NCBI GenBank assembly: GCA_965644265.1
Contig: OZ286461.1
Coordinates: forward strand, 96,534,001 to 96,598,000
Length of the DNA: 64,000 bases
Source of the DNA: Glycera tridactyla
Lineage: Eukaryota
Direction: 5' to 3'
The notes under the pieces are model-generated. The model was not told the origin of the DNA and did not search any database. It saw nothing but the letters and a program-made list of their open reading frames with translations. A program made the position numbers and the translations under genes. This document shows positions 41,431 through 64,000 of the stretch, one piece after another (the stretch's first letter is position 1; every line of letters starts with the position of its first letter).

Positions 41431-43164
41431 GGTGAGGACATTGGTTATATTTTTGATGTCACGATGCTGTCATCACCAAGGGGACACCAGGTGTCAGAAT
41501 GACGCAATGGGTGCACCCATCAATACTGTATGCAGACTTTGGGAAGTCCCGAGATGTAGAGATGATGCTGTGTGCCATCAATAAGACCTAATATCGTTGA
41601 CGGCTTTACAGCAACCACATGTTTATGTGACGTGCTGAGCTGTGGTTGGTATATAGCTGGTCATGGGGTGATATCTTGTGGGGTTATCAGCGCAGAAGAT
41701 TAGACGTCCATTTTGCCAGCCATGCTCGATTAGTCTGCGAATGAGCATGGTCATCGTTTACATCATATATCAGAAATAGCGACAAGATTATATCTCCTAA
41801 AATCGTACCCAATCACCTCGAGGCTGAAAACCCCAAGCAGAATACCAAGCTCAGAATCACACTTTGTAATTTACCTGGATGGCCTCAAACATCCAACCGG
41901 AACAGCTCGAAAACAAAATGGACACATGTACACTGATACGCCTGTGATTTTGTCCTCGTTGCATAATAGAAGAAAATATCATGGCCCGTCTGAGCAAACA
42001 GTATACTACCGACTCACTGTTTTGTTACTGTGCAATTTCAGAAAAGTACCCGAAGTACTGTCTGAGCATTGTATGGTCTCTGTCGAACGCATTACCTCGT
42101 CCTCCCATCTCAGTCTTTATCATTAGCTAAAACATCCTGATCTGCACCGAGCTATAGATAATGCTATCTGATAATCCAAATCAATGGTAATCCCGTTTGT
42201 ACTCTCAAGGCACGGTTAATATATGGTTCTCATCCATAGATAGGGCGGGGAAGGGGGTAAGAGCATGTTGAGTTTCAATCAGCCTACAACCATTCAAGTG
42301 TAGTGTAGTAGTGCAGGTGTACACACCTCTCAGGCATCAACTTCATTATATAACGGTTTCTCCGACATGCTTATCCCTGTAAAGTCTCTTGCTGAACGGA
42401 AGACCTGATCAACCTTGTTCATCAAATAAATAAATCAATATGTGAAAAACTAGAATTACACCACTCCCACGCCTGACCCTACTTTCACTGATCTTCCTCA
42501 CGATAGTGCACCTCCGGCTATATCAAGCATCATCACTGTGGTAATTCTTGTACTGGGTTGATATTTTGTCTAAATTTGCATGCAATTATTCAACAACAGC
42601 GGGCACTGTCCGACAACTATCTTCTGTATCTCAATTACCGCTCTAATACCTCTAATATCCTGTAGGTATGCGATTCTGATAGTTTCAGGCCCTATTCTGG
42701 GCTACCTATAGGCGTCGTTTATGTGTGATAGGAGCAGAGTCATATCCATATCAAACCAATTTTGTAAATTGACAGGATGATTTCTCATGGAAGTGGCTTT
42801 TTTATGGGGGGGGGGGGGGGGTTATGAGGAATGCATAAGATGAGCCATCGTATTGCTCAACTGTGAGTCGTACTGTCATACATGCTATCATAGTGCCTAA
42901 TTAGTAATCGTACTGCCCAATTTGCCCAGGAGAGCAATAAATCCAACAGGAGCCCTCTTGAACACCAGACCATTCATGCGCAATGACACTTGCTATCGGA
43001 TTTGTCCTCGCAAAATAAGCACTTTTAGTACACACTGCTCAAGTGGCAATCACACTACCCAACCGGCTGGCATACTGCCCAACTGGTCATCATACCACCA
43101 GATTAGCTTTTATAATGTGCCCAATCGGCTTTATACCGCCCAACTGGCAACCGACTGTGCCTGA

Positions 43165-43780
43165 CTGGCCATCACACTGCCCAGCTGGCCACCATACAAC
43201 CAAACATACTATCATACTGCCCAGCTGGCCACCCCACTGCCCAACTTGCCACCATACAACCAAACATACTATCATACTGCCCAACTGGCCACCCCACTGC
43301 CCAGCTTGCCATCATACAACCAAACATACTATCATACTGCCCAACTGGCCACCACACTGCCAATCTTGCCACCATACAACCAAACATTCTATCATACTGC
43401 CCAACTGGCCATCACACTGCCCAGCTTGCCACCATACAACCAAACATACTATCATACTGCCCAACTGGCCATCACACTGCCCAGCTTGCCACCATACAAC
43501 CAAACATACTATCATACTGCCCAACTGGCCACCACACTGCCCAGCTTGCCACCATACAACCAAACATACTATCATACTGCCCAACTGGCCATCACACTGC
43601 CTAGCTCGCCACCATACAACCAAACATACTATCACACTGCCCAACTGGCCACCACACTGCCCGACTTGCCACCATACAACCAAACATTCTATCATACTGC
43701 CCAACTGGCCATCACACTGCCCAGCATGCCACCATACAACCAAACATACTATCATACTGCCCAACTGGCCATCATACTGT
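43165..43780. repeat. Tandem array, 60-bp unit (3 x 20-bp subunits), ~10 copies, with degenerate 20-mers on both flanks
   Basis: ACTGCCCAACTGGCCATCAC-ACTGCCCAGCTTGCCACCAT-ACAACCAAACATACTATCAT; successive 60-nt lines are nearly identical. Confidence 0.97.
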
Positions 43781-44779
43781 GCACAACAGACAATCGTATC
43801 TGCTCAACTGGCCACCATACTGCCAAGAAGGCAATAATCCTGTCTAACCGGTAATCATACTGTGCTCAACTGGCCATTACACTATCCTACTGCTCATAAT
43901 TCTGTTCGATATGCCATCTGAGTATGTCAACTGCGTTTGATACGTCACCAGAGTACCTACCCAGCAATCACAGTACCTTATAGCAATCGAACTGCCCAAC
44001 TTGTCAGCTCAAGTCATACCGACCATCACGCTGTAATGCCAAATCGGTATTCGCGCAGGCAATCTACTGCCCTACCGCCCAGCATACTACCCAAACGAAT
44101 ATCTCTTAACAAAAAGCCTCTCTTATTGGCAAACGACCGAACGATGGATATTTCGACTGCTCGATAGTCAATTTACTTGATAATCTATGCTGACCATCGA
44201 AATGAAGTTCTCATAAATCAGTCAATCTAATCAGTAAGCGACGATTTAATGAATCAGCCAAGCAATCGAGCATTGAACTGATCAACTGATCGAACAAGCG
44301 AGTGATCATTCCATCCTCTCTGTTACTCACACATCGATGGCGCAGTTGCATATTCAGTCCGATTACTCGCCAGCAAGTCGGCTGACGGCCAGCAAGTCTG
44401 TAATGTGGGCTTCCTCAGTTGTGTCTCGGCAAAGGGTGGGGGTCAAGGGTTCAAAACCTGCAGACAATGCTGAATGACAAGTGGCGGCACGTGACAAGGA
44501 TACCGGAAGAACACTCTGATTAGCTCGGCAACATATGTGCTGCATCAACAAGAGTCCACAGCCCCCTTCCTAGCATCACCACGGCTCCTGACATATGAGC
44601 GAAATCTTATTTCTACGTCTCTCAATTTCGAACCAACCTTCACTGGCACTGACAGTAGGACCCCATCTCTATTGTAATGTACCTGTGCTCAGTAGGATCA
44701 ATCGATAGTTAGGGTAATGACTATATTGCCAAGAATTGACGCGACTTCATCTTCTGGGAATCATTCTCATTCATCGACA

Positions 44780-49300: not shown

Positions 49301-52060
49301 ATTATTTCACTTTTATACTGTCTAACTATCCGTCATGTGACCCATCTGTCTCTCATACTCTCCACCTATCCACCATGCTGGCTATTTGGCTAACCAGCAT
49401 TACAATAATTGAAACGTAGATGAAGACAATAGTGAGTGACACGTGAGAGTGTGTGATTAGAATATCATTAGATCACTGTTTGTGGGCAGGCGGCGTAGAT
49501 GCTACATCTCAGGCAGTTCACCAACCTCCGCCTGATTAGCATTGTTCTTGACATTATGAGCATTGTTCTTGACATTATGAGCTAGATAACCTCAGCTCTC
49601 CATACAGGTCAGATCATGCGGGAAATATCCCATGCACATCATTCATGTCTGTTACCCAGCACTGTCCACTGGTGTAGAAACTTCTGGAAATTGACTTAAT
49701 TAATTATACAGTCGTATTCATTCCTTGCCAAGTAGGATTTTGCACAGAGCATTATAGATGTGCCTGAAATATTTTTGCCCATAACAGGGAGTGGCCTATG
49801 TCATGTTGGAGGTGGAACTGAAATACCGGAAATATGTAGGGAAGACACACCATATATCTTTAAACAACAATTCATGGGCAATTTTGATTTTGTCCAAGAA
49901 ATTTTGTCCAAAATTTGCATCCAGTAGGACCAAAAAATGTTCACACCTCCACATTTCAGATTTTGCGTTTATGGGCAGAGGAAGATACAACCAACAAACC
50001 GATCAAACAAAGGATCAGGGAATTCATCAGACAATGCCCATCGCACTGGCAATATATGATGTTGAGAGCAGAATATTTGATTGGGCTCCGAGGCATGTAA
50101 CTATTCACCCATCCACCTATCTATGCATATATCCGTGCTTCCGCCCGTGCTCCCACCTGTCTGTCTGTCTGTCTGTTCATTCGCAAGGTTGAGCTAGATG
50201 TCTGTGGATAACACTACCAATATATTGTGAGAATTGGATAACCAAGATATATGAGAAAACACTTCGGAAGTACTAACCGATCCGAGAAATGTAGAACAAA
50301 ATAGTTTACCACCTAAATCATAAATGATTGATATATTTTTAATCATGTGAGTTCGCGTTTCTTTTTGCAACCGAATATCTCTGATACGTAATTAAATTTC
50401 TCGATTGCTGAAAAGATTACATCTGAAGTGTAGGCGTGATATCGACATTGAAATAATGTTTGTACTTTCTGGAGCTGTAGAAGATTCGGCAGAAAGAGGA
50501 GCGGTTCGACAAGTGTGCTGGTCCAGTCAGTGCATCACCAATGAGAGGCAATTTCACAGTTGCCAGGTACGAATTACCATAATCTCCAACAAGTATAAAA
50601 ACGACTAGAGTGAAAGCATCTGGATTTGAATAACCCTTCGGTTCATATTGTGTAAACAAACTTTGAGAAATTCGCATTTTTCATCATGCTCAGAACACAG
50701 GAGGACAACGAGGGAAATAAGTATCTATGCGACCACTCATCGAGCAATCTTAGTTAGTATTCCCTATCTTCTGTGCAGCTTCCATGTCGGCAAGACTCGG
50801 ATCATCTGCCCCGCCTGATACATCATGAATATATCTGAATGGACAACACTCTCATGGTTACATCACATGAGTAGCTCGAATGCACCTTCCTGGCTCGATC
50901 TGCTGTGTTGTGTAAACCCTGCAGGCTGAATATAGGAGGGGAGAGGTTTATTTATGATTCGGGAGGTTGCATCATGTCTTCTTCCCTGGCGACAACGTGA
51001 CATTTTATCTTGGAGCAGATGGAGGCAGTCTGAACAGCTGATCTGCTATAACACAACGTGAAAAATTGTCATATTTGATATTGAATGTACGTATAATGTT
51101 ATCTCCATAAGTTACTTGTTAAGCTCCCTTTTTAAGTTTTTTGATACCATATCTGATGACACCTGTTGCAGTAAGACGAACAAGACATTTGATTCAACCT
51201 CCGGCATCTTTTATGGATGACGTGCAATTAATCGCACAATCATATCGCATGTTATTTCAAACTGATGTCTCAAACTGATGTCTAATTCGCGCCCGGGAAA
51301 GAGACACGGAGTTCGAAGATTCAAGTGAATTGTTGAACATCTCGATGGATTGCACAACATTCACTCCTTGTAGACACGCCATCCATCTGGCTACTTACAG
51401 AATTCGTTTCTCATGGTCGGCTTCCCTGAATTTCGATTGATGAAATGAATATATTTTGAGAAAAAGTGACTTCGGATGAGGGCATTCTAGCCCTCCTGTA
51501 TATATGGTGTGTCACTTGCACAAGATGTGCCATAGCTATGATCAATATTGAATTGTGACTCTGATAATGATGTACTACGTATGATCGAACATATATATAT
51601 ATATATGGGTCATAACCAATAATTGTATCTGAGGCACATATGTTCAGAAACATTATACTAATCTTGCTATGTCGATAATTTCATGAAAACTAGTTGTGTT
51701 TAGTTTCATTTTCACTGTGAAATCCATCCCACAATTAAACTGGACATTAATGAGCGAAATTCCTGATTGAAATAGCATTCAGGCATCGAAATCTTCTTTG
51801 TCCTGCATTATTCATAGGGTCACGGAACCAGTGTAGGGATCCAACACTTGCTCGAAATTGTGATAAAAATGACGAGATACAACATATAGCCACCAGCAAA
51901 TGTAATGAAGAAAGATGCCTGGCCGGCTTTTACTTGAAGTAATGTGTCATGAAGTTACCCGATGCATAATCAGCAGTTTCTAATGCATTATTACTATTAT
52001 ATAAAGTATTTCTTGACGGACAACATGGCTGACAAGAACTCTTTGAAGGTCATCTGGTGG

Positions 52061-52877
52061 CTGATCTGGATGTTGCGCTTGATAATGAGTGTATAGGGTG
52101 CATCTTGTGATGAAGACCACTCTAATTTGTATGACAGACAGCTGGATGTTCTCTTATCTGATCTGATCTAGATGTTGCCGCTTGATAATGAGTGTATACG
52201 GTGGATCTCGTGATGAAGACCACTCTAATTTATATGACAGACAGCTGGATGTTCTCTTATCTGATCTGATCTGGATGTTGCTGCTTGATAATGAGTGTGT
52301 ACGGTGGATCTCGTGATGAAGACCACTCTAATTTGTATGACAGACAGCTGCATGTTCTCTTATCTGATCTGATCTGGATGTTGCTGCTTGATAATGAGTG
52401 TGTACGGTGGATCTCGTGATGAAGACCACTCTAATTTGTATGACAGACAGCTGGATGTTCTCTTATCTGATCTGATCTGGATGTTGCTGCTTGATAATGA
52501 GTGTGTACGGTGGATCTCGTGATGAAGACCACTAATTTGTATGACAGACAGCTGGATGTTCTCTTATCTGATCTGATCTGGATGTTGCTGCTTGATAATG
52601 AGTGTATACTGTGGATCTCGTGATGAAGACCACTCTAATTCGTATGACGGACAGCTTGATGTTCTCTTATCTGATCTGATCTGGATGTTGCCGCTTGATA
52701 ATGAGTGTATACGGTGCATCTCGTGATGAAGACCACTCTAATTTGTATGATGGACAGCTGCATGTTCTCTTATCTGATCTGATCTGGATGTTGCCACTTG
52801 ATAATGAGTGTATACGGTGCATCTCGTGATGGAGACCACTCTAATTTGTATGACGGACAGCTTGATGTTCTCTTATC
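52061..52877. repeat. Tandem array, 103-bp unit, ~8 copies
   Basis: GATGTTGC unit starts at 52069, 52171, 52274, 52377, 52480, 52581, 52684 and 52787; one 1-bp and one 2-bp deletion. Confidence 0.97.
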
Positions 52878-53257
52878 CCCTCCCAAATGTTCACTCACAT
52901 GCACTCAACTACTTATGACATTCCCTTTCGCGTGGGTTCGAGTAAATTAGCAATGGAATTCAGTCAGAACATGCAAGAGACGTTCCGTACTCGCCATTAA
53001 CACAATGATGTATCCGCCGCGAGAATAGAATCATCTTGTGTCTCACTGACAACACTTTCCAACCATCTCTACCCATCCTAATCTGAAACTTCTTTGTGAG
53101 ATTGAATGTTATCTCATGCAACTATATGCCACCATGGCATCCTCAGTATGCCACACCAAGTCCATATTCAACACACAATTTGAGACGAATTCCAACGAAT
53201 TCCACCTCTCGTTCCCTCCCTTGATTTGAGGGGGGAAACGCTCTAGCCAGATCTCGA

Positions 53258-53580
53258 AAAAAACATAATTTTTGAAATAAATTAATTTTTGTAGTTGAAA
53301 ATGATAGCTGTTATATTTGGAGGAATGAGTTATGACAACTTGTGAACACAGATGGCGGTTATTTTTTGATTATTAATTTTTATTAATTATCCGACAAACA
53401 AATACTATTGCAGAATGTTGATATATGTATTGTCCGTGTTGACCAATTTGTTGATTATGATAAAAAGGAAAAAAGAGTCTTATTTTAGGTTGTGTGTATG
53501 GAATTGAGGGTACCAGTAGAGACGGCTATAAAAGGGTCAACAACACAGTGACTCTTCCCATTCTTGTTATACAGTTGAAG
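53258..53580 (+). repeat. Split direct repeat A1 (323 bp)
   Basis: Matches 59395-59717 and 60220-60542 (AAAAAACATAAT...CAGTTGAAG). Confidence 0.96.
53527..53564 (+). promoter_or_regulatory. Candidate Pol II core promoter in repeat A (TATA box plus Inr)
   Basis: TATAAAAG at 53527-53534 and Inr-like CCA(+1)TTCT with A at 53560, 33 nt downstream. Also present in A2 (59664) and A3 (60489). Confidence 0.6.
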
Positions 53581-54464
53581 TAAGCAGGTTGCTCAGGTCG
53601 ATTTCAGATAGGATTTTGGCGGGAAACATGGTGTCAGTTGGAGTTAACCCGTCTTTATCGTATATACCTATACGACAGTGGATAAATTGGAAAGTTAAGG
53701 TTGCCGTACTAGGGCATTCCTTTACTAGACATCAAAGTGAGGAATTACTTGAGGAAATGAAAACCATGGGAGTTTATGAGGAGGTTACACAAGGATTAAT
53801 GCATAGAGGTAGGGTGAATGCTGAGATTTTGAAAGTGGATGATGTGATTGATGTGGTGAATTTCAGAACATGTCCTTTTATCAAGACATATGGAAACAAT
53901 GATCAAATAGAGTTGGAATTTCTCGCGATGGCAGCCTTGAAACCTGATGTACTGATAATCGATTTGGGGAGCAATGACTTGTGTAAAAGTGAGGTTGATC
54001 CAGCAACTCTTGCAGTTGATTTGTTTGAATTAGCAGTCAATTTGCGTCATGCTGGAATAGAGATGGTCATGTTTATGGCATGCTTAGATCGCGTAAAAGG
54101 ACCATCGGATTTCAGAGCAAGAGCGAGAACTTTCAATCAAAAACTGAAATACTGCTGTGATTATGCTAAAAACAGTGGTGGCCTTGGGTTCTATAACACC
54201 AAAGGTTTTGGAAGTTTGGAGGAAGGAGAACCATCACATGTGTATGAATGGAGTGTGGATGGCATTCACCCAATGAGAAACAGTAGATATTTCATGAGAT
54301 ACAGATATGAAGTAAGAAAGGCTATATGGAAAGGAGTAGTAGGCTTTGGGAAAGTTCTAATAGACCTGAGCAACTGAAGAAAATTGGTAGAGAATGGGAA
54401 TTTGTATTTATAATATGTATGTATAATGCAGCCATGAGCTGTGCTCTCATTAACATAATTTCAG
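53580..54464 (+). other. Predicted 885-nt intron containing the whole SGNH ORF
   Basis: Donor GAA|GTAAGC at 53579/53580; acceptor CTCTCATTAACATAATTTCAG|ATG ending at 54464, directly before the gag start. Motif-based only. Confidence 0.55.
53628..54377 (+). CDS. SGNH/GDSL-family hydrolase (esterase), 249 aa from ATG 53628
   Basis: Block I VAVLGHSF (nucleophile Ser), block III IIDLGSNDL, block V DGIHP. The track starts at TTG 53589, but the first ATG is 53628 in strong context (AACATGG). Confidence 0.9.
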   Translation: MVSVGVNPSLSYIPIRQWINWKVKVAVLGHSFTRHQSEELLEEMKTMGVYEEVTQGLMHRGRVNAEILKVDDVIDVVNFRTCPFIKTYGNNDQIELEFLAMAALKPDVLIIDLGSNDLCKSEVDPATLAVDLFELAVNLRHAGIEMVMFMACLDRVKGPSDFRARARTFNQKLKYCCDYAKNSGGLGFYNTKGFGSLEEGEPSHVYEWSVDGIHPMRNSRYFMRYRYEVRKAIWKGVVGFGKVLIDLSN

Positions 54465-56459
54465 ATGGCGAACAAGAGGAAAGTTGCAGATACGGCAGGA
54501 AGTGATCAGAAAAGAAGGAAAGAAGCTCCGGATGATACGGTAGATGATACTGAGTTTCAAGATGTAGTAGAACCTGCAGGTGTTCCGCTTTGTTCACCAC
54601 AGGTTGGGGTAGACAAATACACATCAGTATCAGAAAGCCATAGTACTACACAAACTTTTGAAGGCCAAAGTGATCAAGATGTAGTGGGAAGTGGGTTGAC
54701 TTTTGGCCAAAAGCTGGATCGCCTTAAGCGACACGCAGAAAACATATGCAGTATGCGCACACGAACAATGACACAAGGAGTTGGTGGTTACCCAAGGTTA
54801 GGTCAATCTGTGAGTCACATACCATCTTTTGGTACATATACACACCAAGGGAGACAAAGGGAGGCAACGGCAACGTCAACGGGAGGAGAAAGAAATTATT
54901 CTGTTGCAGATGTAAGACAAGATCTACAAACAGCAATGAATTCAGCCGTTACACAAATGGGTGCTCTCACGAATCTAATGTCTGGTATACAGGAACAACT
55001 GGACAGCTTGTCAGATTTGTCAAGTCGCCAGGAGGATCAGCAACCAACCAGTCAACCACAACCAAATGTACATCAAAATATGCAAGGTGAGCACCATAAC
55101 ACAAGGTTTGGGGATATACCACAGCAGAGTGAGCAAGCACGCATGTTTGACAAATACAGACAATGGGTGAAAGGTCAAAATGCTAGAAACACACAACGAA
55201 CTGACATATCAACTCATGAAACAGGTGAAACAAACATTGACAATACAACGAACGCTGACCGCACATACAGGTTGAATGAACCGGACCATGACCAGTTGAA
55301 TGCGAGCAACATTGCTCAGTTTCAGGGGGCAGGTTCACCAATACATACCGACAATACTTTGCCATTGAATGTATGGGATAGAGGAGGTTCTTTAATATGC
55401 GGGCAGTGGAGTGGTCCTGGAAATATTTCATCATCATTTGATATGTTAGAGGGTTTAAGAAGTAGTGTAACAAATTGCAGGCAAAAGCAAGATTCCTTGT
55501 TTCGAGATGCAGCGATTAATTTGGGAATGAGAGATGTAAGAAATGATGCCAGCAGAAAAAATAACAAATCGCCTTTTCAACGTAATAGTAATAGTTCAAC
55601 TAACTTTCAGCATGCAAATTACCAAGGTCCAACAGTCACAAGCGGGGACCAACAATTGCCAACTATATATGGAAGTAACCCCCCTCAACCTCAAAATAGG
55701 GTTCATTTCGGGGATCCAATGTCAAGACACATAGTATCAGGGGGGATGCCTATAGGATATAAAATAGAGTTAGAAACGAAAATAGATATATGGCAAGACA
55801 GGTACGTAGACTTAGCGGAATTGTTGCAACCACAAAAAATAACAGATCATCATTATATAGTTGACAGGAAAACAGGGGAGTTTGTTCTAGCTAAACGTAA
55901 ACGCATAATAAGAACAATTAAGGATTGGGATGAAGCATTCTTAGTTTATGTTGCCATATATAACCAAAATCCAGTAAAAAATATTGAGCAAAAAGCAAGG
56001 GAGGGGGAGGAGTTATTATCATACATAAATGATGTAAGGGGAATTGCAGCAAAAAGGGGAGATTTCAAACTTTATGATGAGGAGTTTTGCATGCAGCGAT
56101 CGTATTTACAAGAACCATATCCATGGAATTCATACCATGCTAAATTGTATCATGAATGTAGTCAACCAGTGAGTTTTCAGACAAATTATGTTAATAGATA
56201 TGAATCTAGTAGCAACTTCACACAGCAAAACAATGGCAACCAAATGAGAAAAGGTTACTGTTTCGCATATAACTCTGCAAATAGGAGATGTATCATACCG
56301 AGATGTCCATTCAAACACGTATGTTCTAGTTGTCAGCTAAGGCACCCTGTCTTCCAATGCAGGTCTGGGGCGAACCAATCAGGAAACAGTCAAGCGGGAG
56401 GAATTAAGAAAAAGCCTGGTAACACCAACGACACCAATAAACCACCAGAGTCTACTTAA
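54465..56459 (+). CDS. gag: Gag-like protein, 664 aa
   Basis: KIDIWQDRYVDLAELL, IRTIKDWDEAFLVY and LYDEEF core segments typical of DIRS/Ngaro Gag; C-terminal C-x9-C-x4-C-x3-H plus C-x2-C-x3-H-x4-C zinc-finger cluster. Confidence 0.88.
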   Translation: MANKRKVADTAGSDQKRRKEAPDDTVDDTEFQDVVEPAGVPLCSPQVGVDKYTSVSESHSTTQTFEGQSDQDVVGSGLTFGQKLDRLKRHAENICSMRTRTMTQGVGGYPRLGQSVSHIPSFGTYTHQGRQREATATSTGGERNYSVADVRQDLQTAMNSAVTQMGALTNLMSGIQEQLDSLSDLSSRQEDQQPTSQPQPNVHQNMQGEHHNTRFGDIPQQSEQARMFDKYRQWVKGQNARNTQRTDISTHETGETNIDNTTNADRTYRLNEPDHDQLNASNIAQFQGAGSPIHTDNTLPLNVWDRGGSLICGQWSGPGNISSSFDMLEGLRSSVTNCRQKQDSLFRDAAINLGMRDVRNDASRKNNKSPFQRNSNSSTNFQHANYQGPTVTSGDQQLPTIYGSNPPQPQNRVHFGDPMSRHIVSGGMPIGYKIELETKIDIWQDRYVDLAELLQPQKITDHHYIVDRKTGEFVLAKRKRIIRTIKDWDEAFLVYVAIYNQNPVKNIEQKAREGEELLSYINDVRGIAAKRGDFKLYDEEFCMQRSYLQEPYPWNSYHAKLYHECSQPVSFQTNYVNRYESSSNFTQQNNGNQMRKGYCFAYNSANRRCIIPRCPFKHVCSSCQLRHPVFQCRSGANQSGNSQAGGIKKKPGNTNDTNKPPEST

Positions 56460-58005
56460 ATGGTTGGAAGGTTATGAAGAAAGTGAAAGAGAATATCTGG
56501 TAAATGGTTTTGCGCAGGGTTTCGATATAGGGTTTAAAAGTATATCACCAGGGTATAGAGGGCGCAACCCAGATTCCATTAAGCAATATATCGATATTGC
56601 TAAAGATTTGATTTACGCAGACGTAGTGTTGGATAGAATTGCAGGCCCTTTCACAGAAGTACCTTTTTGTAACTTTCACATTTCACCGATTAGCGTAGTC
56701 CCAAAGAGAGAGCAAGGAAAATATAGATTGATACACAACCTGTCTTCACCATATAATCATTTGTCAATAAATCATCACATACCTGATAATGAAGCATCTG
56801 TAAAATACATGACTGTTGATACAGTAATTAATCATGTTTTAGAAGTAGGGAGACAAGCTTATATTTGCAAAGCGGACATTAAGTCTGCATTTAGGATAGT
56901 GCCAGTAAAACCTGAGCAATTTCACTTATTGGGGATGAGGTTGGAGAATGAATATTTTGTCAATAAATGCTTAGCTATGGGGGGTAGATCTTCTTGTAGA
57001 ATATTTGAGAGGTTTTCAACAGCAATACAGTGGGTTTGTAATAATAAATTAGGAATAAAATACATGGCACATATGATTGACGACTACTGTATTGTAGCAG
57101 AGGGGGAAAGAGAGTGCAATAAGCAGCTACAAACTTTCAAATCATTCTGTGAAAATGTGGGTATACCGTTATGTCCCAAAAAGACCCAACCACCAAATCA
57201 AATCATGGAATTCTTGGGAGTAGAAATTAATGTAATAGAGGGATATGCCAAAATTCCAGTAAACAAACTTTTGAAGTATGCACAACAAATAAACGATATA
57301 GTAGAAGCAGGCAGATGTTCTTATGGAGATATGCGCTCATTGGTAGGCAAATTAAATTGGTGTGCGTCTCTAATAAAGGTGGGAAAATCCTTTTTAAGGG
57401 GATTGATAAACAGTACAAAAGGATTGAAAAATCCAGCACATTTTGTCACATTTTCGGAACATATGAGAAATGATCTCATCATGTGGCGCATGTTTCTGAG
57501 AGAATATAATGGTTATTCATATTTAAGACACAGAGCATTACAAAGGATGGAAACAGAACACATACAGTCAGATGCTTGCAAAACGGGGGCAGCAGTAATT
57601 TTCAGAAATTTGTGGTTCTATTTGGAATACAAGAATGATTGGCAGAACAAAAACATCGCTTACCAAGAGATGTATCCTATCCTGGTTGCAATGGTGGTCT
57701 TTAGATCATCTCTCAGAAACAATAAAGTCATATTTCATTGCGATAACATGGCAGTGGTGGAGGTGCTGAGTAAGAGAAGAGGGAAAGATGAGGAACTGGT
57801 ACGTTTGTTGAGACACATAAGTTTGATGGCATTACACAATGATGTGGATATTGATTGCAAGCATGTTGCAGGAACGGATAATGTTTTGGCTGACAAGTTG
57901 TCACGATATCAGTTTTCGCAGGTGTTCTTGATGGAAGCAGGATTAGCAGTACATCCAGTTCCAGTTCCGCAGGAATACAACCCTCAGGTTTGTGGGATCT
58001 GGTAA
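56341..58005 (+). CDS. pol: Reverse transcriptase / RNase H (frame open from 56341, overlapping the gag end; track start 56464)
   Basis: TPTTPIN...GF..GFDIG N-terminus, ISPISVVPK, KYRLIHNLS, ADIKSAFRIVPV, LAMGGRSSCRIF, HMIDDY; RNase H SDA, EMYP, HCDN, NVLADKLSR. Confidence 0.95.
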   Translation, partial: GTLSSNAGLGRTNQETVKREELRKSLVTPTTPINHQSLLKWLEGYEESEREYLVNGFAQGFDIGFKSISPGYRGRNPDSIKQYIDIAKDLIYADVVLDRIAGPFTEVPFCNFHISPISVVPKREQGKYRLIHNLSSPYNHLSINHHIPDNEASVKYMTVDTVINHVLEVGRQAYICKADIKSAFRIVPVKPEQFHLLGMRLENEYFVNKCLAMGGRSSCRIFERFSTAIQWVCNNKLGIKYMAHMIDDYCIVAEGERECNKQLQTFKSFCENVGIPLCPKKTQPPNQIMEFLGVEINVIEGYAKIPVNKLLKYAQQINDIVEAGRCSYGDMRSLVGKLNWCASLIKVGKSFLRGLINSTKGLKNPAHFVTFSEHMRNDLIMWRMFLREYNGYSYLRHRALQRMETEHIQSDACKTGAAVIFRNLWFYLEYKNDWQNKNIAYQEMYPILVAMVVFRSSLRNNKVIFHCDNMAVVEVLSKRRGKDEELVRLLRHISLMALHNDVDIDCKHVAGTDNVLADKLSRYQFSQVFLMEAGLAVHPVPVPQEYNPQVCGIW

Positions 58006-58889
58006 ATCAGTTAATTGATTCCTCGTTCGCTGATACAACAATGAAACAGTATAATACAGTTTGGGAAGAATTTGAGGAATTTTTATGGCAAAGATCTTTG
58101 AGTTTGAGTCACGAAGCATTATGCGTTTATGTGGCTTTTCTAGTAAATAAAGGATATAAAGTCACATCGATCAGATCAAAATTAGCCGCTATATCTCATG
58201 GGCTAAAAGTCAGAGATTGTCCAGATTTTTGTAAGCATTATGTTATTAATAGAATGTTAACGGGGGCTACAAGGAAGGGATTGGAAGGAGACAAAAGATT
58301 AGGGGTAGGGGAAACTATTTTGAGAAAAATAGTTGAATCATATCCCATCATAGCAATCAATCAATATGAATTAGTATTATTTCGCACACTATTTGTTTGG
58401 GCTTATACAGCATGTATGAGGGTTTCGGAATATGCAGAAACAGGGACCAGTGAGCATAAAGTGATGATGGAGGATTTGAGGGTAGCGGAAAGACATGGGG
58501 AAGTGGTGGCGTTCCAGCTCAGTTTTAGGTCATACAAGTGTTCAAGGGGAGAAAGGCGATTTATCGTGGAGAGGCGCGAAGGCGACATCTTGTGCCCAGT
58601 TGCGAGAATGGTGGAGTGGCTTAACGTTAGAGGGCGTGAATCAGGACCGCTGTTTGGTATAAAAGGTAAGGCGGTGTCGGCGGGGATGGTGAACGATAGG
58701 TTAAAGAAGGCAGCAAGATTTGTATTAGGTCAAAATTTGGGGAGTCGTGTTTCAAGTCATTCTTTTCGAATTGGTCGTTGCACAGACTGGGTTGAACAGG
58801 GATATACAGAAGAACAAATCAAATTAAAGGGAAGGTGGGCCTCAAACGCATTCAAATCATACATCCGCTCTCCAGCAGTTCCTTTATAG
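57990..58889 (+). CDS. Tyrosine recombinase (frame open from 57894; first ATG 58041)
   Basis: Catalytic set MRVSE (R), SHSFRIG (H-x-x-R), GRW (W), FKSYIR (Y); N-terminal SAM-like domain T...Y...W..F..F. Confidence 0.95.
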   Translation: MWDLVNQLIDSSFADTTMKQYNTVWEEFEEFLWQRSLSLSHEALCVYVAFLVNKGYKVTSIRSKLAAISHGLKVRDCPDFCKHYVINRMLTGATRKGLEGDKRLGVGETILRKIVESYPIIAINQYELVLFRTLFVWAYTACMRVSEYAETGTSEHKVMMEDLRVAERHGEVVAFQLSFRSYKCSRGERRFIVERREGDILCPVARMVEWLNVRGRESGPLFGIKGKAVSAGMVNDRLKKAARFVLGQNLGSRVSSHSFRIGRCTDWVEQGYTEEQIKLKGRWASNAFKSYIRSPAVPL

Positions 58890-58917
58890 TGGGCCAGCTG
58901 CTTGCTACGCAATTGTG

Positions 58918-59394
58918 GGCCAGCTTGGCCCATCTATATACTACAGGAAGTCAATATGTTGCAATAATACTATGCCAAAACAAATCAATGAACTGTCGTG
59001 GAAATCCACTGTTATGATATAGCACGAATATCATCACGTTGTCTGGACAGGTTGGGCTGGATGGCTATTTCATTATTAAAAGGATATAAAGAAGTAGCGG
59101 TACAGTTTGATCAGTTTATTTCCATTGAAATATACTGATTTCGGCCAGAACAACATGTCGAAGTTCAGGTGAACTTCTGTTTAAAACAGCGCTGCTAGGC
59201 ATTTCTTTTAGGCAAGGGGATCGGAAAAGGCAGAATGAGCCGTTACATGAAGTGCCTAGTGGCACAGGTTTTGTACAAAAGATTTTGTAAATAAATTGGC
59301 AAATATGAATTGTGGAAAATGTTAATTATTCGTTGAATGAATGAGAGTTTCACAACAGGGGTGGTGAAACTAGTATGTGCTTCTGAGAAACAAC
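58918..59394 (+). repeat. Split direct repeat B1 (477 bp)
   Basis: Matches 59743-60219 with one substitution seen (TATTCGTT vs TATTTGTT); contains AATAAA at 59290. Confidence 0.96.
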
Positions 59395-59717
59395 AAAAAA
59401 CATAATTTTTGAAATAAATTAATTTTTGTAGTTGAAAATGATAGCTGTTATATTTGGAGGAATGAGTTATGACAACTTGTGAACACAGATGGCGGTTATT
59501 TTTTGATTATTAATTTTTATTAATTATCCGACAAACAAATACTATTGCAGAATGTTGATATATGTATTGTCCGTGTTGACCAATTTGTTGATTATGATAA
59601 AAAGGAAAAAAGAGTCTTATTTTAGGTTGTGTGTATGGAATTGAGGGTACCAGTAGAGACGGCTATAAAAGGGTCAACAACACAGTGACTCTTCCCATTC
59701 TTGTTATACAGTTGAAG
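59395..59717 (+). repeat. Split direct repeat A2
   Basis: Copy of A1; followed by ACC rather than TAAGC. Confidence 0.96.
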
Positions 59718-59742
59718 ACCACCACCAACCCCACCACCACCT

Positions 59743-60219
59743 GGCCAGCTTGGCCCATCTATATACTACAGGAAGTCAATATGTTGCAATAATACTATGC
59801 CAAAACAAATCAATGAACTGTCGTGGAAATCCACTGTTATGATATAGCACGAATATCATCACGTTGTCTGGACAGGTTGGGCTGGATGGCTATTTCATTA
59901 TTAAAAGGATATAAAGAAGTAGCGGTACAGTTTGATCAGTTTATTTCCATTGAAATATACTGATTTCGGCCAGAACAACATGTCGAAGTTCAGGTGAACT
60001 TCTGTTTAAAACAGCGCTGCTAGGCATTTCTTTTAGGCAAGGGGATCGGAAAAGGCAGAATGAGCCGTTACATGAAGTGCCTAGTGGCACAGGTTTTGTA
60101 CAAAAGATTTTGTAAATAAATTGGCAAATATGAATTGTGGAAAATGTTAATTATTTGTTGAATGAATGAGAGTTTCACAACAGGGGTGGTGAAACTAGTA
60201 TGTGCTTCTGAGAAACAAC
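59743..60219 (+). repeat. Split direct repeat B2 (3' end of copy 1)
   Basis: Copy of B1; AATAAA at 60115-60120. Confidence 0.96.
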
Positions 60220-60589
60220 AAAAAACATAATTTTTGAAATAAATTAATTTTTGTAGTTGAAAATGATAGCTGTTATATTTGGAGGAATGAGTTATGACAA
60301 CTTGTGAACACAGATGGCGGTTATTTTTTGATTATTAATTTTTATTAATTATCCGACAAACAAATACTATTGCAGAATGTTGATATATGTATTGTCCGTG
60401 TTGACCAATTTGTTGATTATGATAAAAAGGAAAAAAGAGTCTTATTTTAGGTTGTGTGTATGGAATTGAGGGTACCAGTAGAGACGGCTATAAAAGGGTC
60501 AACAACACAGTGACTCTTCCCATTCTTGTTATACAGTTGAAGTAAGCAGGTTGCTCAGGTCGATTTCAGATAGGATTTTGGCGGGAAAC

Positions 60590-61339
60590 ATGGTGTCAGT
60601 TGGAGTTAACCCGTCTTTATCGTATATACCTATACGACAGTGGATAAATTGGAAAGTTAAGGTTGCCGTACTAGGGCATTCCTTTACTAGACATCAAAGT
60701 GAGGAATTACTTGAGGAAATGAAAACCATGGGAGTTTATGAGGAGGTTACACAAGGATTAATGCATAGAGGTAGGGTGAATGCTGAGATTTTGAAAGTGG
60801 ATGATGTGATTGATGTGGTGAATTTCAGAACATGTCCTTTTATCAAGACATATGGAAACAATGATCAAATAGAGTTGGAATTTCTCGCGATGGCAGCCTT
60901 GAAACCTGATGTACTGATAATCGATTTGGGGAGCAATGACTTGTGTAAAAGTGAGGTTGATCCAGCAACTCTTGCAGTTGATTTGTTTGAATTAGCAGTC
61001 AATTTGCGTCATGCTGGAATAGAGATGGTCATGTTTATGGCATGCTTAGATCGCGTAAAAGGACCATCGGATTTCAGAGCAAGAGCGAGAACTTTCAATC
61101 AAAAACTGAAATACTGCTGTGATTATGCTAAAAACAGTGGTGGCCTTGGGTTCTATAACACCAAAGGTTTTGGAAGTTTGGAGGAAGGAGAACCATCACA
61201 TGTGTATGAATGGAGTGTGGATGGCATTCACCCAATGAGAAACAGTAGATATTTCATGAGATACAGATATGAAGTAAGAAAGGCTATATGGAAAGGAGTA
61301 GTAGGCTTTGGGAAAGTTCTAATAGACCTGAGCAACTGA
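60590..61339 (+). CDS. SGNH hydrolase, copy 2
   Basis: Protein identical to copy 1. Confidence 0.9.
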   Translation: MVSVGVNPSLSYIPIRQWINWKVKVAVLGHSFTRHQSEELLEEMKTMGVYEEVTQGLMHRGRVNAEILKVDDVIDVVNFRTCPFIKTYGNNDQIELEFLAMAALKPDVLIIDLGSNDLCKSEVDPATLAVDLFELAVNLRHAGIEMVMFMACLDRVKGPSDFRARARTFNQKLKYCCDYAKNSGGLGFYNTKGFGSLEEGEPSHVYEWSVDGIHPMRNSRYFMRYRYEVRKAIWKGVVGFGKVLIDLSN

Positions 61340-61426
61340 AGAAAATTGGTAGAGAATGGGAATTTGTATTTATAATATGTATGTATAATGCAGCCATGAG
61401 CTGTGCTCTCATTAACATAATTTCAG

Positions 61427-63421
61427 ATGGCGAACAAGAGGAAAGTTGCAGATACGGCAGGAAGTGATCAGAAAAGAAGGAAAGAAGCTCCGGATGATAC
61501 GGTAGATGATACTGAGTTTCAAGATGTAGTAGAACCTGCAGGTGTTCCGCTTTGTTCACCACAGGTTGGGGTAGACAAATACACATCAGTATCAGAAAGC
61601 CATAGTACTACACAAACTTTTGAAGGCCAAAGTGATCAAGATGTAGTGGGAAGTGGGTTGACTTTTGGCCAAAAGCTGGATCGCCTTAAGCGACACGCAG
61701 AAAACATATGCAGTATGCGCACACGAACAATGACACAAGGAGTTGGTGGTTACCCAAGGTTAGGTCAATCTGTGAGTCACATACCATCTTTTGGTACATA
61801 TACACACCAAGGGAGACAAAGGGAGGCAACGGCAACGTCAACGGGAGGAGAAAGAAATTATTCTGTTGCAGATGTAAGACAAGATCTACAAACAGCAATG
61901 AATTCAGCCGTTACACAAATGGGTGCTCTCACGAATCTAATGTCTGGTATACAGGAACAACTGGACAGCTTGTCAGATTTGTCAAGTCGCCAGGAGGATC
62001 AGCAACCAACCAGTCAACCACAACCAAATGTACATCAAAATATGCAAGGTGAGCACCATAACACAAGGTTTGGGGATATACCACAGCAGAGTGAGCAAGC
62101 ACGCATGTTTGACAAATACAGACAATGGGTGAAAGGTCAAAATGCTAGAAACACACAACGAACTGACATATCAACTCATGAAACAGGTGAAACAAACATT
62201 GACAATACAACGAACGCTGACCGCACATACAGGTTGAATGAACCGGACCATGACCAGTTGAATGCGAGCAACATTGCTCAGTTTCAGGGGGCAGGTTCAC
62301 CAATACATACCGACAATACTTTGCCATTGAATGTATGGGATAGAGGAGGTTCTTTAATATGCGGGCAGTGGAGTGGTCCTGGAAATATTTCATCATCATT
62401 TGATATGTTAGAGGGTTTAAGAAGTAGTGTAACAAATCGCAGGCAAAAGCAAGATTCCTTGTTTCGAGATGCAGCGATTAATTTGGGAATGAGAGATGTA
62501 AGAAATGATGCCAGCAGAAAAAATAACAAATCGCCTTTTCAACGTAATAGTAATAGTTCAACTAACTTTCAGCATGCAAATTACCAAGGTCCAACAGTCA
62601 CAAGCGGGGACCAACAATTGCCAACTATATATGGAAGTAACCCCCCTCAACCTCAAAATAGGGTTCATTTCGGGGATCCAATGTCAAGACACATAGTATC
62701 AGGGGGGATGCCTATAGGATATAAAATAGAGTTAGAAACGAAAATAGATATATGGCAAGACAGGTACGTAGACTTAGCGGAATTGTTGCAACCACAAAAA
62801 ATAACAGATCATCATTATATAGTTGACGGGAAAACAGGGGAGTTTGTTCTAGCTAAACGTAAACGCATAATAAGAACAATTAAGGATTGGGATGAAGCAT
62901 TCTTAGTTTATGTTGCCATATATAACCAAAATCCAGTAAAAAATATTGAGCAAAAAGCAAGGGAGGGGGAGGAGTTATTATCATACATAAATGATGTAAG
63001 GGGAATTGCAGCAAAAAGGGGAGATTTCAAACTTTATGATGAGGAGTTTTGCATGCAGCGATCGTATTTACAAGAACCATATCCATGGAATTCATACCAT
63101 GCTAAATTGTATCATGAATGTAGTCAACCAGTGAGTTTTCAGACAAATTATGTTAATAGATATGAATCTAGTAGCAACTTCAAACAGCAAAACAATGGCA
63201 ACCAAATGAGAAAAGGTTACTGTTTCGCATATAACTCTGCAAATAGGAGATGTATCATACCGAGATGTCCATTCAAACACGTATGTTCTAGTTGTCAGCT
63301 AAGGCACCCTGTCTTCCAATGCAGGTCTGGGGCGAACCAATCAGGAAACAGTCAAGCGGGAGGAATTAAGAAAAAGCCTGGTAACACCAACGACACCAAT
63401 AAACCACCAGAGTCTACTTAA
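61427..63421 (+). CDS. gag: Gag-like protein, copy 2
   Basis: 664 aa; differs from copy 1 at three residues (C>R, R>G, T>K). Confidence 0.88.
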   Translation: MANKRKVADTAGSDQKRRKEAPDDTVDDTEFQDVVEPAGVPLCSPQVGVDKYTSVSESHSTTQTFEGQSDQDVVGSGLTFGQKLDRLKRHAENICSMRTRTMTQGVGGYPRLGQSVSHIPSFGTYTHQGRQREATATSTGGERNYSVADVRQDLQTAMNSAVTQMGALTNLMSGIQEQLDSLSDLSSRQEDQQPTSQPQPNVHQNMQGEHHNTRFGDIPQQSEQARMFDKYRQWVKGQNARNTQRTDISTHETGETNIDNTTNADRTYRLNEPDHDQLNASNIAQFQGAGSPIHTDNTLPLNVWDRGGSLICGQWSGPGNISSSFDMLEGLRSSVTNRRQKQDSLFRDAAINLGMRDVRNDASRKNNKSPFQRNSNSSTNFQHANYQGPTVTSGDQQLPTIYGSNPPQPQNRVHFGDPMSRHIVSGGMPIGYKIELETKIDIWQDRYVDLAELLQPQKITDHHYIVDGKTGEFVLAKRKRIIRTIKDWDEAFLVYVAIYNQNPVKNIEQKAREGEELLSYINDVRGIAAKRGDFKLYDEEFCMQRSYLQEPYPWNSYHAKLYHECSQPVSFQTNYVNRYESSSNFKQQNNGNQMRKGYCFAYNSANRRCIIPRCPFKHVCSSCQLRHPVFQCRSGANQSGNSQAGGIKKKPGNTNDTNKPPEST

Positions 63422-64000
63422 ATGGTTGGAAGGTTATGAAGAAAGTGAAAGAGAATATCTGGTAAATGGTTTTGCGCAGGGTTTCGATATAGGGTTTAAA
63501 AGTATATCACCAGGGTATAGAGGGCGCAACCCAGATTCCATTAAGCAATATATCGATATTGCTAAAGATTTGATTTACGCAGACGTAGTGTTGGATAGAA
63601 TTGCAGGCCCTTTCACAGAAGTACCTTTTTGTAACTTTCACATTTCACCGATTAGCGTAGTCCCAAAGAGAGAGCAAGGAAAATATAGATTGATACACAA
63701 CCTGTCTTCACCATATAATCATTTGTCAATAAATCATCACATACCTGATAATGAAGCATCTGTAAAATACATGACTGTTGATACAGTAATTAATCATGTT
63801 TTAGAAGTAGGGAGACAAGCTTATATTTGCAAAGCGGACATTAAGTCTGCATTTAGGATAGTGCCAGTAAAACCTGAGCAATTTCACTTATTGGGGATGA
63901 GGTTGGAGAATGAATATTTTGTCAATAAATGCTTAGCTATGGGGGGTAGATCTTCTTGTAGAATATTTGAGAGGTTTTCAACAGCAATACAGTGGGTTTG
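63303..64000 (+). CDS. pol: RT/RNase H, copy 2, 5' part only
   Basis: Matches 56341 onward by eye; runs off the window before the DD motif. Confidence 0.9.

What the first reader, a model, noticed from the sequence alone, without database searches (positions are those of the whole stretch)
53258..60219. Ngaro-type YR retrotransposon with the SGNH hydrolase as the first ORF, upstream of gag
Seen: the left genomic junction is at 53258, followed by repeat A1, so the order inside the element is SGNH-Gag-RT/RH-YR. This is not an artefact of the tandem arrangement. All four ORFs are intact and the hydrolase keeps its Ser, GxND and DxxH motifs. Known: Ngaro elements described with a hydrolase (related to the CR1 ORF1 esterase) carry it downstream of the YR ORF. 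Inference: this is a distinct lineage or architecture in which the esterase is the cap-proximal, first-translated gene. It may act in membrane or particle handling, as proposed for CR1/L2 ORF1 esterases.
Basis: partly seen in the sequence, partly recalled or inferred. Interest (0 to 1): 0.85.

Follow-up and report, generated by a model that had tools for sequence, protein, structure and literature searches.

The report
Ngaro retrotransposon with leading esterase gene
A young, intact tyrosine-recombinase (Ngaro-type) retrotransposon sits here as a head-to-tail pair and carries its lipase-like esterase gene in front of gag instead of behind the recombinase; dozens of related elements from marine-animal samples share this layout, so it is a real but modest variant of a known family of mobile DNA.

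Summary
Window 53258-60219 is one 6,962-bp unit: A1, SGNH, gag, RT/RNase H, YR, B1, A2, 25-nt linker, B2. A second copy follows directly and runs off the window. All four reading frames are open. The SGNH keeps Ser31, G114-x-N116-D117 and D211-x-x-H214, and it folds confidently as an SGNH hydrolase.

The order is not a tandem artefact. Three solitary relatives in long contigs (L005, L009, L094) have the A repeat directly upstream of the SGNH. At least 23 non-identical related loci put the SGNH upstream of gag. SGNH and RT divergence are tightly correlated (Mantel r = 0.87), so the gene is a long-term resident.

It belongs to a distinct "GHS" subfamily, only distantly related to the CR1/L2 ORF1 esterase. 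A nested sister clade carries the CR1/L2-type "GDS" esterase behind YR, the published position.

The papers I could read describe only the position after YR. I could not check Repbase or Dfam.

Esterase function and "first translated" remain inference. A GTAAG donor before the SGNH start and a YnAG acceptor abutting the gag start suggest the SGNH may lie in a removable 5' intron; this is untested.

Verdict: new variant of a known kind, moderate interest.

The parts
53258..53580 (+). A1, left split direct repeat (323 nt). Carries TATAAAAG at 53527-53534 and an initiator-like CCATTC near 53560. AATAAA at 53276.
   Evidence: Identical to 59395-59717 and 60220-60542; sequence read; motif positions.
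53580..53585 (+). Candidate 5' splice donor GTAAGC, 48 nt upstream of the SGNH ATG, at the exact end of A1.
   Evidence: Read. GTAAG lies at the same place in L006, L008, L005, L004 and L035. The statistics are post hoc. Inference only.
53628..54377 (+). SGNH (GDSL-like) hydrolase ORF, 249 aa. It opens at the first ATG after the predicted transcription start.
   Evidence: AlphaFold2 pLDDT 89.7. Foldseek top hits are PAF acetylhydrolase Ib and GDSL lipases.
54378..54464 (+). 87-nt spacer with stops in the SGNH/gag frame. It ends in a branch-point-like CATTAAC and TTTCAG, a candidate 3' splice acceptor abutting the gag ATG.
   Evidence: L006 has the same 87-nt spacer ending in TGTTTAG|ATG, and L008 ends in TTTCAG|ATG.
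54465..56459 (+). gag-like ORF, 664 aa, with a Cys/His-rich C-terminus.
   Evidence: A profile built from four gag ORFs matches related loci. No Pfam hit.
56341..58005 (+). RT/RNase H open frame. It has no ATG before the RT domain, lies in the +1 frame relative to gag, and overlaps gag by 119 nt. No methyltransferase domain.
57894..58889 (+). Tyrosine recombinase open frame, overlapping the end of RT in the -1 frame. Catalytic R144, H257, R260 and Y291.
58918..59394 (+). B1 repeat (477 nt), with AATAAA at 59290.
59395..59717 (+). A2 repeat, identical to A1.
59718..59742 (+). 25-nt C/A-rich linker between A2 and B2. L005 has a similar C-rich tract after its A2.
   Evidence: Function unknown.
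59743..60219 (+). B2 repeat, right end of copy 1. One difference from B1, at the position matching 59331. AATAAA at 60115.
60220..64000 (+). Second, head-to-tail copy: A3, SGNH 60590-61339, gag 61427-63421, then the start of RT. Cut by the window end.
   Evidence: There are 3 differences from copy 1 in 3,781 nt.

Best explanation
This is a recently active Ngaro-type tyrosine-recombinase retrotransposon, present as two head-to-tail copies. It belongs to a broad, previously undescribed clade whose units read A1, SGNH, gag, RT/RNase H, YR, B1, A2, B2.

Shown:
- The repeat and ORF anatomy.
- An intact SGNH active-site signature and a confident SGNH fold.
- The same order in solitary relatives, with the A repeat directly upstream of the SGNH.
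- Long co-inheritance of SGNH with RT.
- The SGNH belongs to a transposon-borne "GHS...GSND...DGIHP" subfamily. This differs from the CR1/L2-type "GDS" esterase, which sits behind YR in a nested sister clade.

Inferred:
- The promoter lies in A (TATA at 53527, start near 53560). The full-length RNA then has the SGNH ATG as its first start codon.
- That RNA serves both as SGNH mRNA and as the template for reverse transcription.
- By analogy with the ZfL2-1 ORF1p esterase, the SGNH is a low-turnover lipid esterase and membrane-binding factor that helps assemble or traffic the gag/RNA/RT particle.
- gag and the downstream frames need a bypass of the 249-codon SGNH ORF. The most likely bypass is removal of an 885-nt intron (donor at 53580, acceptor at 54464), which would put the gag ATG about 20 nt from the cap.
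- RT and YR follow by frame change or re-initiation from overlapping frames.
- The YR then inserts a circular or multimeric cDNA at the B|A junction.
For: Anatomy.

Domains. YR catalytic residues.

SGNH family: 125 relatives in the representative library, best 38% identity. S31 is conserved in 103 of 121 rows, N116 in 117 and H214 in 109. pLDDT 89.7. SGNH folds lead the PDB search. The family profile reaches 3p94, PAF-AH and 4c1b.

Architecture elsewhere:
- L005: A1 about 6853-7121, SGNH 7137-7808, gag, RT, YR to 12366, B1 from 12434, A2 13032-13298, B2 to 14246, all in a 450-kb contig.
- L009 and L094 show the same layout.
- L001, L004, L006 and L008.
- Among 73 non-identical RT rows drawn from the window and 95 related loci, 23 have the SGNH upstream of gag and 5 have YR, then about 1 kb, then SGNH and gag, as expected for tandem or circular contigs.

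Co-inheritance: Mantel r = 0.873, 0 of 5,000 permutations as high. The SGNH tree mirrors the RT clades.

Sister clade: 12 RT rows, support 100 and 96. They carry GDS...HxGTND...DGVHL ORFs after YR, which hit only 4c1b, at E = 7e-10.

Splice-like signals.

Esterase analogy: PMC3905857.
Against: - No expression data. The transcription start, polyadenylation site and splicing are read from motifs only.
- The splice test was designed after the pattern had been seen. Strict GTRAG is present in only 2 of the 12 loci not used to form the idea.
- The window acceptor narrowly fails my own pyrimidine threshold.
- The first exon would be only about 20 nt.
- The single-sequence Pfam score for the SGNH is just below the gathering cut-off.
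- Some close relatives (L001, P0068, L002) keep the ORF but have lost Ser, Asn and His. Catalysis is therefore not always needed.
- One related element (L095) has 1.17 kb upstream of gag without any SGNH.
- The RT frame has no ATG and lies in the +1 frame, so how it is translated is unexplained.
- RT phylogeny against named Ngaro references was not possible.
Confidence: 0.75

Rival explanations
1. Permutation artefact. The element is an ordinary Ngaro with the hydrolase at the 3' end, and the apparent 5' position comes from choosing the wrong unit boundary in a tandem or circular array.
For: The window shows a tandem pair with the right end unseen. Several metagenome contigs are circularly permuted or overlap at their ends, for example L022, L057 and L053.
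Against: B1-A2-linker-B2 lies between YR and the next SGNH. The SGNH is therefore separated from YR by the whole repeat block in any permutation. The left flank of A1 is unrelated to B. The solitary elements L005, L009 and L094 have A directly before the SGNH and B1-A2-B2 after YR. In true 3' types the SGNH starts 18-300 nt after YR (L010, L088, L090).
Confidence: 0.03
2. Local capture. The SGNH segment is a recent insertion or a captured host gene, peculiar to this copy or family.
For: The word-index search with the SGNH found nothing. The window's proteins are absent from the collection.
Against: The exhaustive search found 125 relatives, nearly all 200-290 aa stand-alone ORFs. Those I looked up sit next to gag/RT/YR. 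SGNH and RT divergence co-vary. The catalytic motifs are conserved across the family.
Confidence: 0.02
3. Same architecture but a different route to gag. gag-RT-YR would be made without splicing, from an internal promoter in the AT-rich 87-nt spacer (TATA-like TTTATAAT and TGTATAAT at about 54405-54425), by re-initiation, or through an internal ribosome entry site. The GTAAG and YAG motifs would be coincidental.
For: The spacer is AT-rich with TATA-like strings. Splice motifs are weak or absent in several clade members such as L018 and L022. Strict donors are not enriched in the held-out loci. A 20-nt first exon is unusually short.
Against: Donor and acceptor occur together, at the same places, in the window's own subclade. 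The window, L006 and L008 share only 35-38% SGNH identity. Acceptor-like sites abut the gag ATG in 5 of 17 elements against 3.3% of all ATGs, and in 0 of 17 at the SGNH ATG. Re-initiation after a 249-codon ORF is inefficient in eukaryotes (general knowledge).
Confidence: 0.4
4. The SGNH protein acts non-catalytically, as a scaffold or a membrane or nucleic-acid binding ORF1-like protein, and its esterase chemistry is dispensable.
For: L001, P0068, L002, P0117 and P0120 keep full-length ORFs but have replaced Ser, Asn, Asp and His. In ZfL2-1, liposome binding survives active-site mutations and turnover is low (PMC3905857).
Against: In the window copy, and in about 85-95% of family members, every catalytic residue is kept. 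That argues for selection on catalysis.
Confidence: 0.25

Closest known systems
Ngaro elements with a hydrolase ORF (DrNgaro of zebrafish; Xenopus DIRS-53_XT and DIRS-54_XT)
   Same: YR plus RT/RNase H plus gag-like ORF, A1...B1-A2-B2 split direct repeats, no methyltransferase, and an extra SGNH hydrolase ORF (PMC9210276, PMC7192593).
   Different: In those elements the hydrolase follows YR and the ORFs overlap. Here it lies between A1 and gag, 87 nt before gag, and belongs to a different SGNH subfamily (GHS rather than GDS)..
CR1/L2-type LINE ORF1p esterase (ZfL2-1, PDB 4c1b)
   Same: A transposon-encoded SGNH esterase in the first ORF of the element RNA. The catalytic Ser, Asn, Asp and His are kept. 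The family profile reaches 4c1b at E = 8.8e-6.
   Different: The window protein alone does not hit 4c1b. It has Asp at the site of the transposon-specific His191; the Ser228 site was not checked. It has no coiled coil and stands alone beside a separate gag. The element is a YR retrotransposon and not a LINE.
PAF acetylhydrolase Ib catalytic subunits and bacterial GDSL-like lipases or sialate O-acetylesterases
   Same: Best structural matches (Foldseek probability 1.00, TM about 0.5-0.6) and the same active-site blocks.
   Different: Only 12-17% identity. The window protein has an extra helical segment at about residues 31-70. These are cellular enzymes, not transposon-borne ones.
DIRS1 and PAT-like YR retrotransposons
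   Same: YR-mediated integration, RT/RNase H, and terminal sequence restored from internal repeats (PMC7192593).
   Different: Those carry a methyltransferase domain, and DIRS1 has inverted repeats plus an internal complementary region. Neither is present here.
Spliced subgenomic mRNAs of retroviruses and some LTR retrotransposons
   Same: If the predicted intron is used, the unspliced RNA is both genome and mRNA for one protein, and the spliced RNA serves another.
   Different: Here the upstream accessory gene would be the one removed so that gag can be expressed. This rests on motif evidence only.

Membership tests
Ngaro-type YR retrotransposon | Tyrosine recombinase with the R-H-R-Y catalytic residues in place of a DDE integrase | tested here: met
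   R144, H257, R260 and Y291 lie on conserved columns. The Pfam Phage_integrase hit is weak, E = 0.0066.
Ngaro-type YR retrotransposon | Reverse transcriptase plus RNase H ORF | tested here: met
   RVT_1 3e-13 and RVT_3 (RNase H-like) 1.9e-4. There are 64 homologues of up to 48% identity.
Ngaro-type YR retrotransposon | Split direct repeats A1 ... B1 A2 B2 | tested here: met
   A is 323 nt in three identical copies, and B is 477 nt in two copies with one difference.
Ngaro-type YR retrotransposon | No methyltransferase domain (separates Ngaro from PAT and DIRS1) | tested here: met
   Pfam finds only RT and RNase H in the 513-aa ORF, and YR starts immediately after it.
Ngaro-type YR retrotransposon | RT groups with reference Ngaro elements (for example DrNgaro1) in a phylogeny | not testable with these tools
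   No named Ngaro reference sequences were available. The hits carry no family names.
Hydrolase-bearing Ngaro as published | Hydrolase ORF downstream of YR and overlapping it | tested here: not met
   The SGNH lies between A1 and gag. Published position: PMC9210276.
SGNH (GDSL-like) hydrolase | Block I Ser, block III G-x-N-D, block V D-x-x-H | tested here: met
   S31, G114/N116/D117 and D211/H214.
SGNH (GDSL-like) hydrolase | Block II oxyanion Gly | tested here: inconclusive
   The candidate column (about residue 89) is variable in the family alignment.
SGNH (GDSL-like) hydrolase | Three-layer alpha/beta/alpha fold | tested here: met
   AlphaFold2 pLDDT 89.7, pTM 0.87. 75 PDB matches at E <= 0.001; the 50 listed are nearly all SGNH enzymes.
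SGNH (GDSL-like) hydrolase | Pfam gathering score | tested here: inconclusive
   31.6 bits against a cut-off of 32.9 for the window protein. Relatives carry PF13472 in precomputed hits.
SGNH (GDSL-like) hydrolase | Esterase activity | not testable with these tools
   Needs recombinant protein.
Transposon esterase of CR1/L2 type (Schneider et al. 2013) | Transposon-specific His191/Ser228 pair and direct sequence similarity to ZfL2-1 | tested here: not met
   The window has Asp112 at the His191 site; the Ser228 site was not checked. It shows no phmmer hit to 4c1b. The 3' SGNH of L088 does hit 4c1b, at E = 7e-10.

The most novel reading that the evidence does not exclude
The esterase gene would sit inside a 5'-leader intron of the retrotransposon. 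The unspliced RNA would be the genome and the esterase mRNA. Removing the 885-nt intron (53580-54464) would give a gag mRNA with a roughly 20-nt leader. That would be a retrovirus-like splicing switch in a tyrosine-recombinase retrotransposon. It would explain how an accessory gene can occupy the cap-proximal slot without silencing gag. It would also explain why esterase modules of two different subfamilies could settle at different ends of related Ngaro elements.
Probability: 0.3. Interest if true: 0.6.

Novelty: new variant of a known kind. Interest (0 to 1): 0.42.

Why it matters
Esterase domains have been picked up repeatedly by unrelated retroelements: CR1/L2, RTE and Penelope-like elements, and Ngaro. 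Nobody knows what they do.

This clade adds a natural comparison set:
- a second esterase subfamily;
- a different position, cap-proximal and next to gag;
- a sister clade with the CR1/L2-type esterase behind YR;
- relatives whose esterase ORF is kept but catalytically dead.

Together these could show whether catalysis or mere binding matters, and whether gene position affects dosage.

The element is very young. Its repeats are identical and its two copies are 99.9% alike, so intact protein sequences are in hand for biochemistry.

The gain is incremental for transposon biology. It does not point to a new kind of system.

Tried and rejected
- The word-index search with the SGNH gave nothing. 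The exhaustive search was needed.
- The profile search for named relatives returned no organism names, and the cluster look-up gave no names either. The host taxa of the relatives stay unknown, apart from bivalve RT hits.
- Exact look-ups of the window's gag and LINE proteins found nothing, so the source organism is not identified.
- The search for related loci failed with the SGNH alignment (no conserved stretch) and with the single RT. It worked with the RT alignment.
- Rfam found nothing in the window.
- Goodwin & Poulter 2004 and Poulter & Butler 2015 are not held. Nine literature searches found no description of a 5' hydrolase in a YR retrotransposon. One of them was badly posed and wasted.
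- A short intron lying wholly upstream of the SGNH ATG would be only about 28 nt, so I rejected it.
- I rejected an SGNH-gag fusion by readthrough or splicing. The 87-nt spacer has four in-frame stops and there is no donor before the SGNH stop.
- I rejected a -1 frameshift at the A-rich run near the end of gag, because that frame is closed.
- Rooting the RT tree with distant outgroups gave long, unstable branches. I therefore do not claim a direction (5' to 3' or 3' to 5') for the change of position.
- Loci without an SGNH hit mostly lack enough upstream sequence to be informative.


Full report
WHAT IS THERE

The region is a head-to-tail pair of one 6,962-bp unit. Unit 1 runs 53258-60219:
- A1 53258-53580
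- SGNH ORF, ATG 53628 to stop 54377
- 87-nt spacer
- gag 54465-56459
- RT/RNase H frame 56341-58005
- YR frame 57894-58889
- B1 58918-59394
- A2 59395-59717
- a 25-nt C/A-rich linker
- B2 59743-60219

A3 begins at 60220, and the second unit runs to the window end.

The three A copies are identical. B1 and B2 differ at one base. The two units differ at 3 of 3,781 positions, all nonsynonymous in gag. The pair is therefore real and very young.

The sequence left of 53258 is a unique stretch following a 103-bp satellite, and it has no similarity to the end of B. A1 is thus a genuine left terminus.

DOMAINS

Pfam gives RVT_1 (3e-13), an RNase H-like RVT_3, a weak Phage_integrase and Lipase_GDSL_2 (2.9e-7, just under the cut-off). 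It finds no methyltransferase. The YR keeps R144, H257, R260 and Y291.

The SGNH keeps G-H-S31, G114-S-N116-D117 and D211-G-I-H214. In an alignment of 121 relatives these columns are 85-97% conserved. The AlphaFold2 model is confident (pLDDT 89.7). Its best PDB matches are PAF acetylhydrolase Ib, GDSL-like lipases and sialate O-acetylesterases.

IS THE ORDER AN ARTEFACT OF THE TANDEM?

No. The whole B1-A2-linker-B2 block separates YR from the next SGNH, so no choice of unit boundary puts the SGNH directly behind YR.

Independent relatives settle the point.
- L005 lies inside a 450-kb long-read contig. It is a solitary element reading A1, SGNH, gag, RT, YR, B1, A2, B2, with unrelated flanks.
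- L009 and L094 come from the same assembly. One is an older copy and the other is internally deleted. Both have the A repeat directly before the SGNH.
- L001, L004, L006 and L008 show the SGNH immediately before gag.

A scan of metagenome contigs with an RT alignment returned 80 loci. I mapped them with profiles of SGNH, gag, RT and YR. Among 73 non-identical RT rows:
- 23 have the SGNH upstream of gag.
- 5 have YR, then about 1 kb, then SGNH and gag, as expected for tandem or circularised contigs.
- 42 are too short to tell.

IS THE SGNH A RESIDENT GENE?

Yes. Across 20 elements, pairwise SGNH identity tracks RT identity (Mantel r = 0.87; 0 of 5,000 permutations as high). The SGNH tree recovers the same major groups as the RT tree.

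The family has 125 members in the representative library, nearly all stand-alone 200-290-aa ORFs. Every one I looked up lies in a YR-retrotransposon context.

TWO ESTERASE TYPES, TWO POSITIONS

The window's protein belongs to a "GHSF...GSNDL...WSxDGIHP" subfamily. One well-supported RT clade of 12 loci (support 100 and 96) instead carries ORFs reading "GDSIV...HxGTNDL...WSxILPR...DGVHL" downstream of YR.

The L088 example from that clade hits a single PDB entry, 4c1b, the ZfL2-1 LINE ORF1p esterase (E = 7e-10). It has the His that Schneider et al. call transposon-specific (PMC3905857).

The window protein alone does not reach 4c1b. Its family profile does so only at 8.8e-6. It has Asp at the site of that His; I did not check the partner Ser site.

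A distant TARA element (L010, L011) has a GHS-type SGNH directly behind YR. Both subfamilies can therefore occupy the 3' slot.

Outgroup rooting was unstable, so I do not claim a direction of change.

One related element, L095, shows 1.17 kb upstream of gag with no SGNH. Several relatives (L001, P0068, L002) keep the ORF but have lost Ser, Asn and His.

HOW IT PROBABLY WORKS

This section is inference.
- Transcription start: A carries TATAAAAG at 53527 and an initiator-like site near 53560. No ATG lies between there and 53628, and the SGNH ATG has A at -3 and G at +4. On a full-length RNA the SGNH is therefore the first ORF.
- RNA end: AATAAA signals in B (59290, 60115) and at the start of A fit the Ngaro model, in which the RNA starts in A1, ends in B2 and is completed from B1-A2.
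- Bypass: a 249-codon first ORF with a strong start would block scanning to gag, so some bypass is needed.
- Splice-like signals: in the window, L006 and L008 (35-38% SGNH identity) a GTAAG donor lies 10-50 nt before the SGNH ATG. A pyrimidine-rich YAG abuts the gag ATG, with a branch-point-like motif upstream. The window and L006 share the same 87-nt spacer length.

Across 17 non-redundant elements:
- G[TC]RAG occurs within 80 nt upstream of the SGNH ATG in 13, against 18% expected.
- An acceptor abuts the gag ATG in 5, against 3.3% of all ATGs.
- No acceptor abuts the SGNH ATG in any.

These tests were framed after the pattern had been seen. Strict GTRAG is present in only 2 of the 12 held-out loci, and some of the signal is a clade-specific CAGGCAAGT motif. 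I therefore give splicing about 0.3-0.4. An internal promoter in the AT-rich spacer, or re-initiation, are the alternatives.

RT lies in the +1 frame, overlaps gag by 119 nt and has no ATG. YR overlaps RT in the -1 frame. How they are translated is unexplained.

The proposed role for the SGNH is a low-turnover lipid esterase and membrane binder that helps the particle. It rests entirely on analogy with ZfL2-1 (PMC3905857).

COMPARISON WITH WHAT IS KNOWN, AND NOVELTY

The element meets the structural criteria of Ngaro: YR, RT/RNase H, split direct repeats and no methyltransferase. RT phylogeny against named references could not be run.

The papers I could read place the Ngaro hydrolase after YR (PMC9210276) or just say that some Ngaro encode one (PMC7192593, PMC6681497). 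Nine searches found no 5' hydrolase described.

The founding papers and Repbase/Dfam were out of reach. Curators may therefore already hold such consensus sequences.

I rate it a new variant of a known kind. The architecture is real, clade-wide and apparently undescribed, but all its parts are familiar.

LIMITS
- The source organism is unknown. Relatives come from bivalve genomes and marine metagenomes.
- The six N runs in the window were left untouched.
- Nothing here looked human.

Noticed in passing
window 21041-23941 (-): Intact 966-aa LINE ORF2 with an AP-endonuclease and a reverse transcriptase (RVT_1 2.8e-33). There is no esterase ORF1 upstream and no other SGNH in the window.
   Followed up: partly
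window 52019-52934: 103-bp satellite of about nine copies (72-98% identity), ending 320 nt before the element's left junction.
   Followed up: no
window 43043-43854: Tandem coding-like repeat with a period of about 66 nt (...HHTTKHTIILPNWP...), open in several frames. It coincides with a strong negative GC skew (-0.29) at 42-44 kb. The Pfam hits are spurious low-complexity matches.
   Followed up: partly
window 59718-59742; L005 13299-13325: A C-rich tract (ACCACCACCAACCCC... and TCCTCCACCACCCCTCC...) follows A2 in two distant elements. It may be a replication or priming signal. Function unknown.
   Followed up: no
L001 40-963; L002 4833-5600; P0068, P0117, P0120: Full-length SGNH-like ORFs that have replaced the catalytic Ser, Asn, Asp and His (for example GHE, ANE, NGF..T). 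These are apparent pseudo-enzymes retained next to gag.
   Followed up: partly
window 55476, 55866, 56221 (against copy 2): The only three differences between the tandem copies are all nonsynonymous changes in gag (C338R, R468G, T586K).
   Followed up: partly
L005 about 7015-7050; L006 about 1135-1145; L008 about 5-15; L095 about 195-230: CACGTG (E-box) motifs lie just upstream of the predicted start sites in the A repeats or leaders of several relatives. The window's A repeat has none.
   Followed up: no
L029, L031, L054, L065 leaders: A conserved TTTCAGGCAAGT motif lies 50-80 nt upstream of the SGNH ATG in one subclade. It could be a GC-type splice donor or a start-site motif.
   Followed up: no
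window 5121-5423, 6036-6213, 15989-16195, 28146-28290, 29316-29444, 36207-36633: Six runs of N (1,389 nt in all). They were left as they are.
   Followed up: no
L022, L053, L057, L036: Contigs of related elements overlap at their ends or run YR, repeat, SGNH, gag. Tandem or circular forms therefore seem common in this clade, as in the window.
   Followed up: partly
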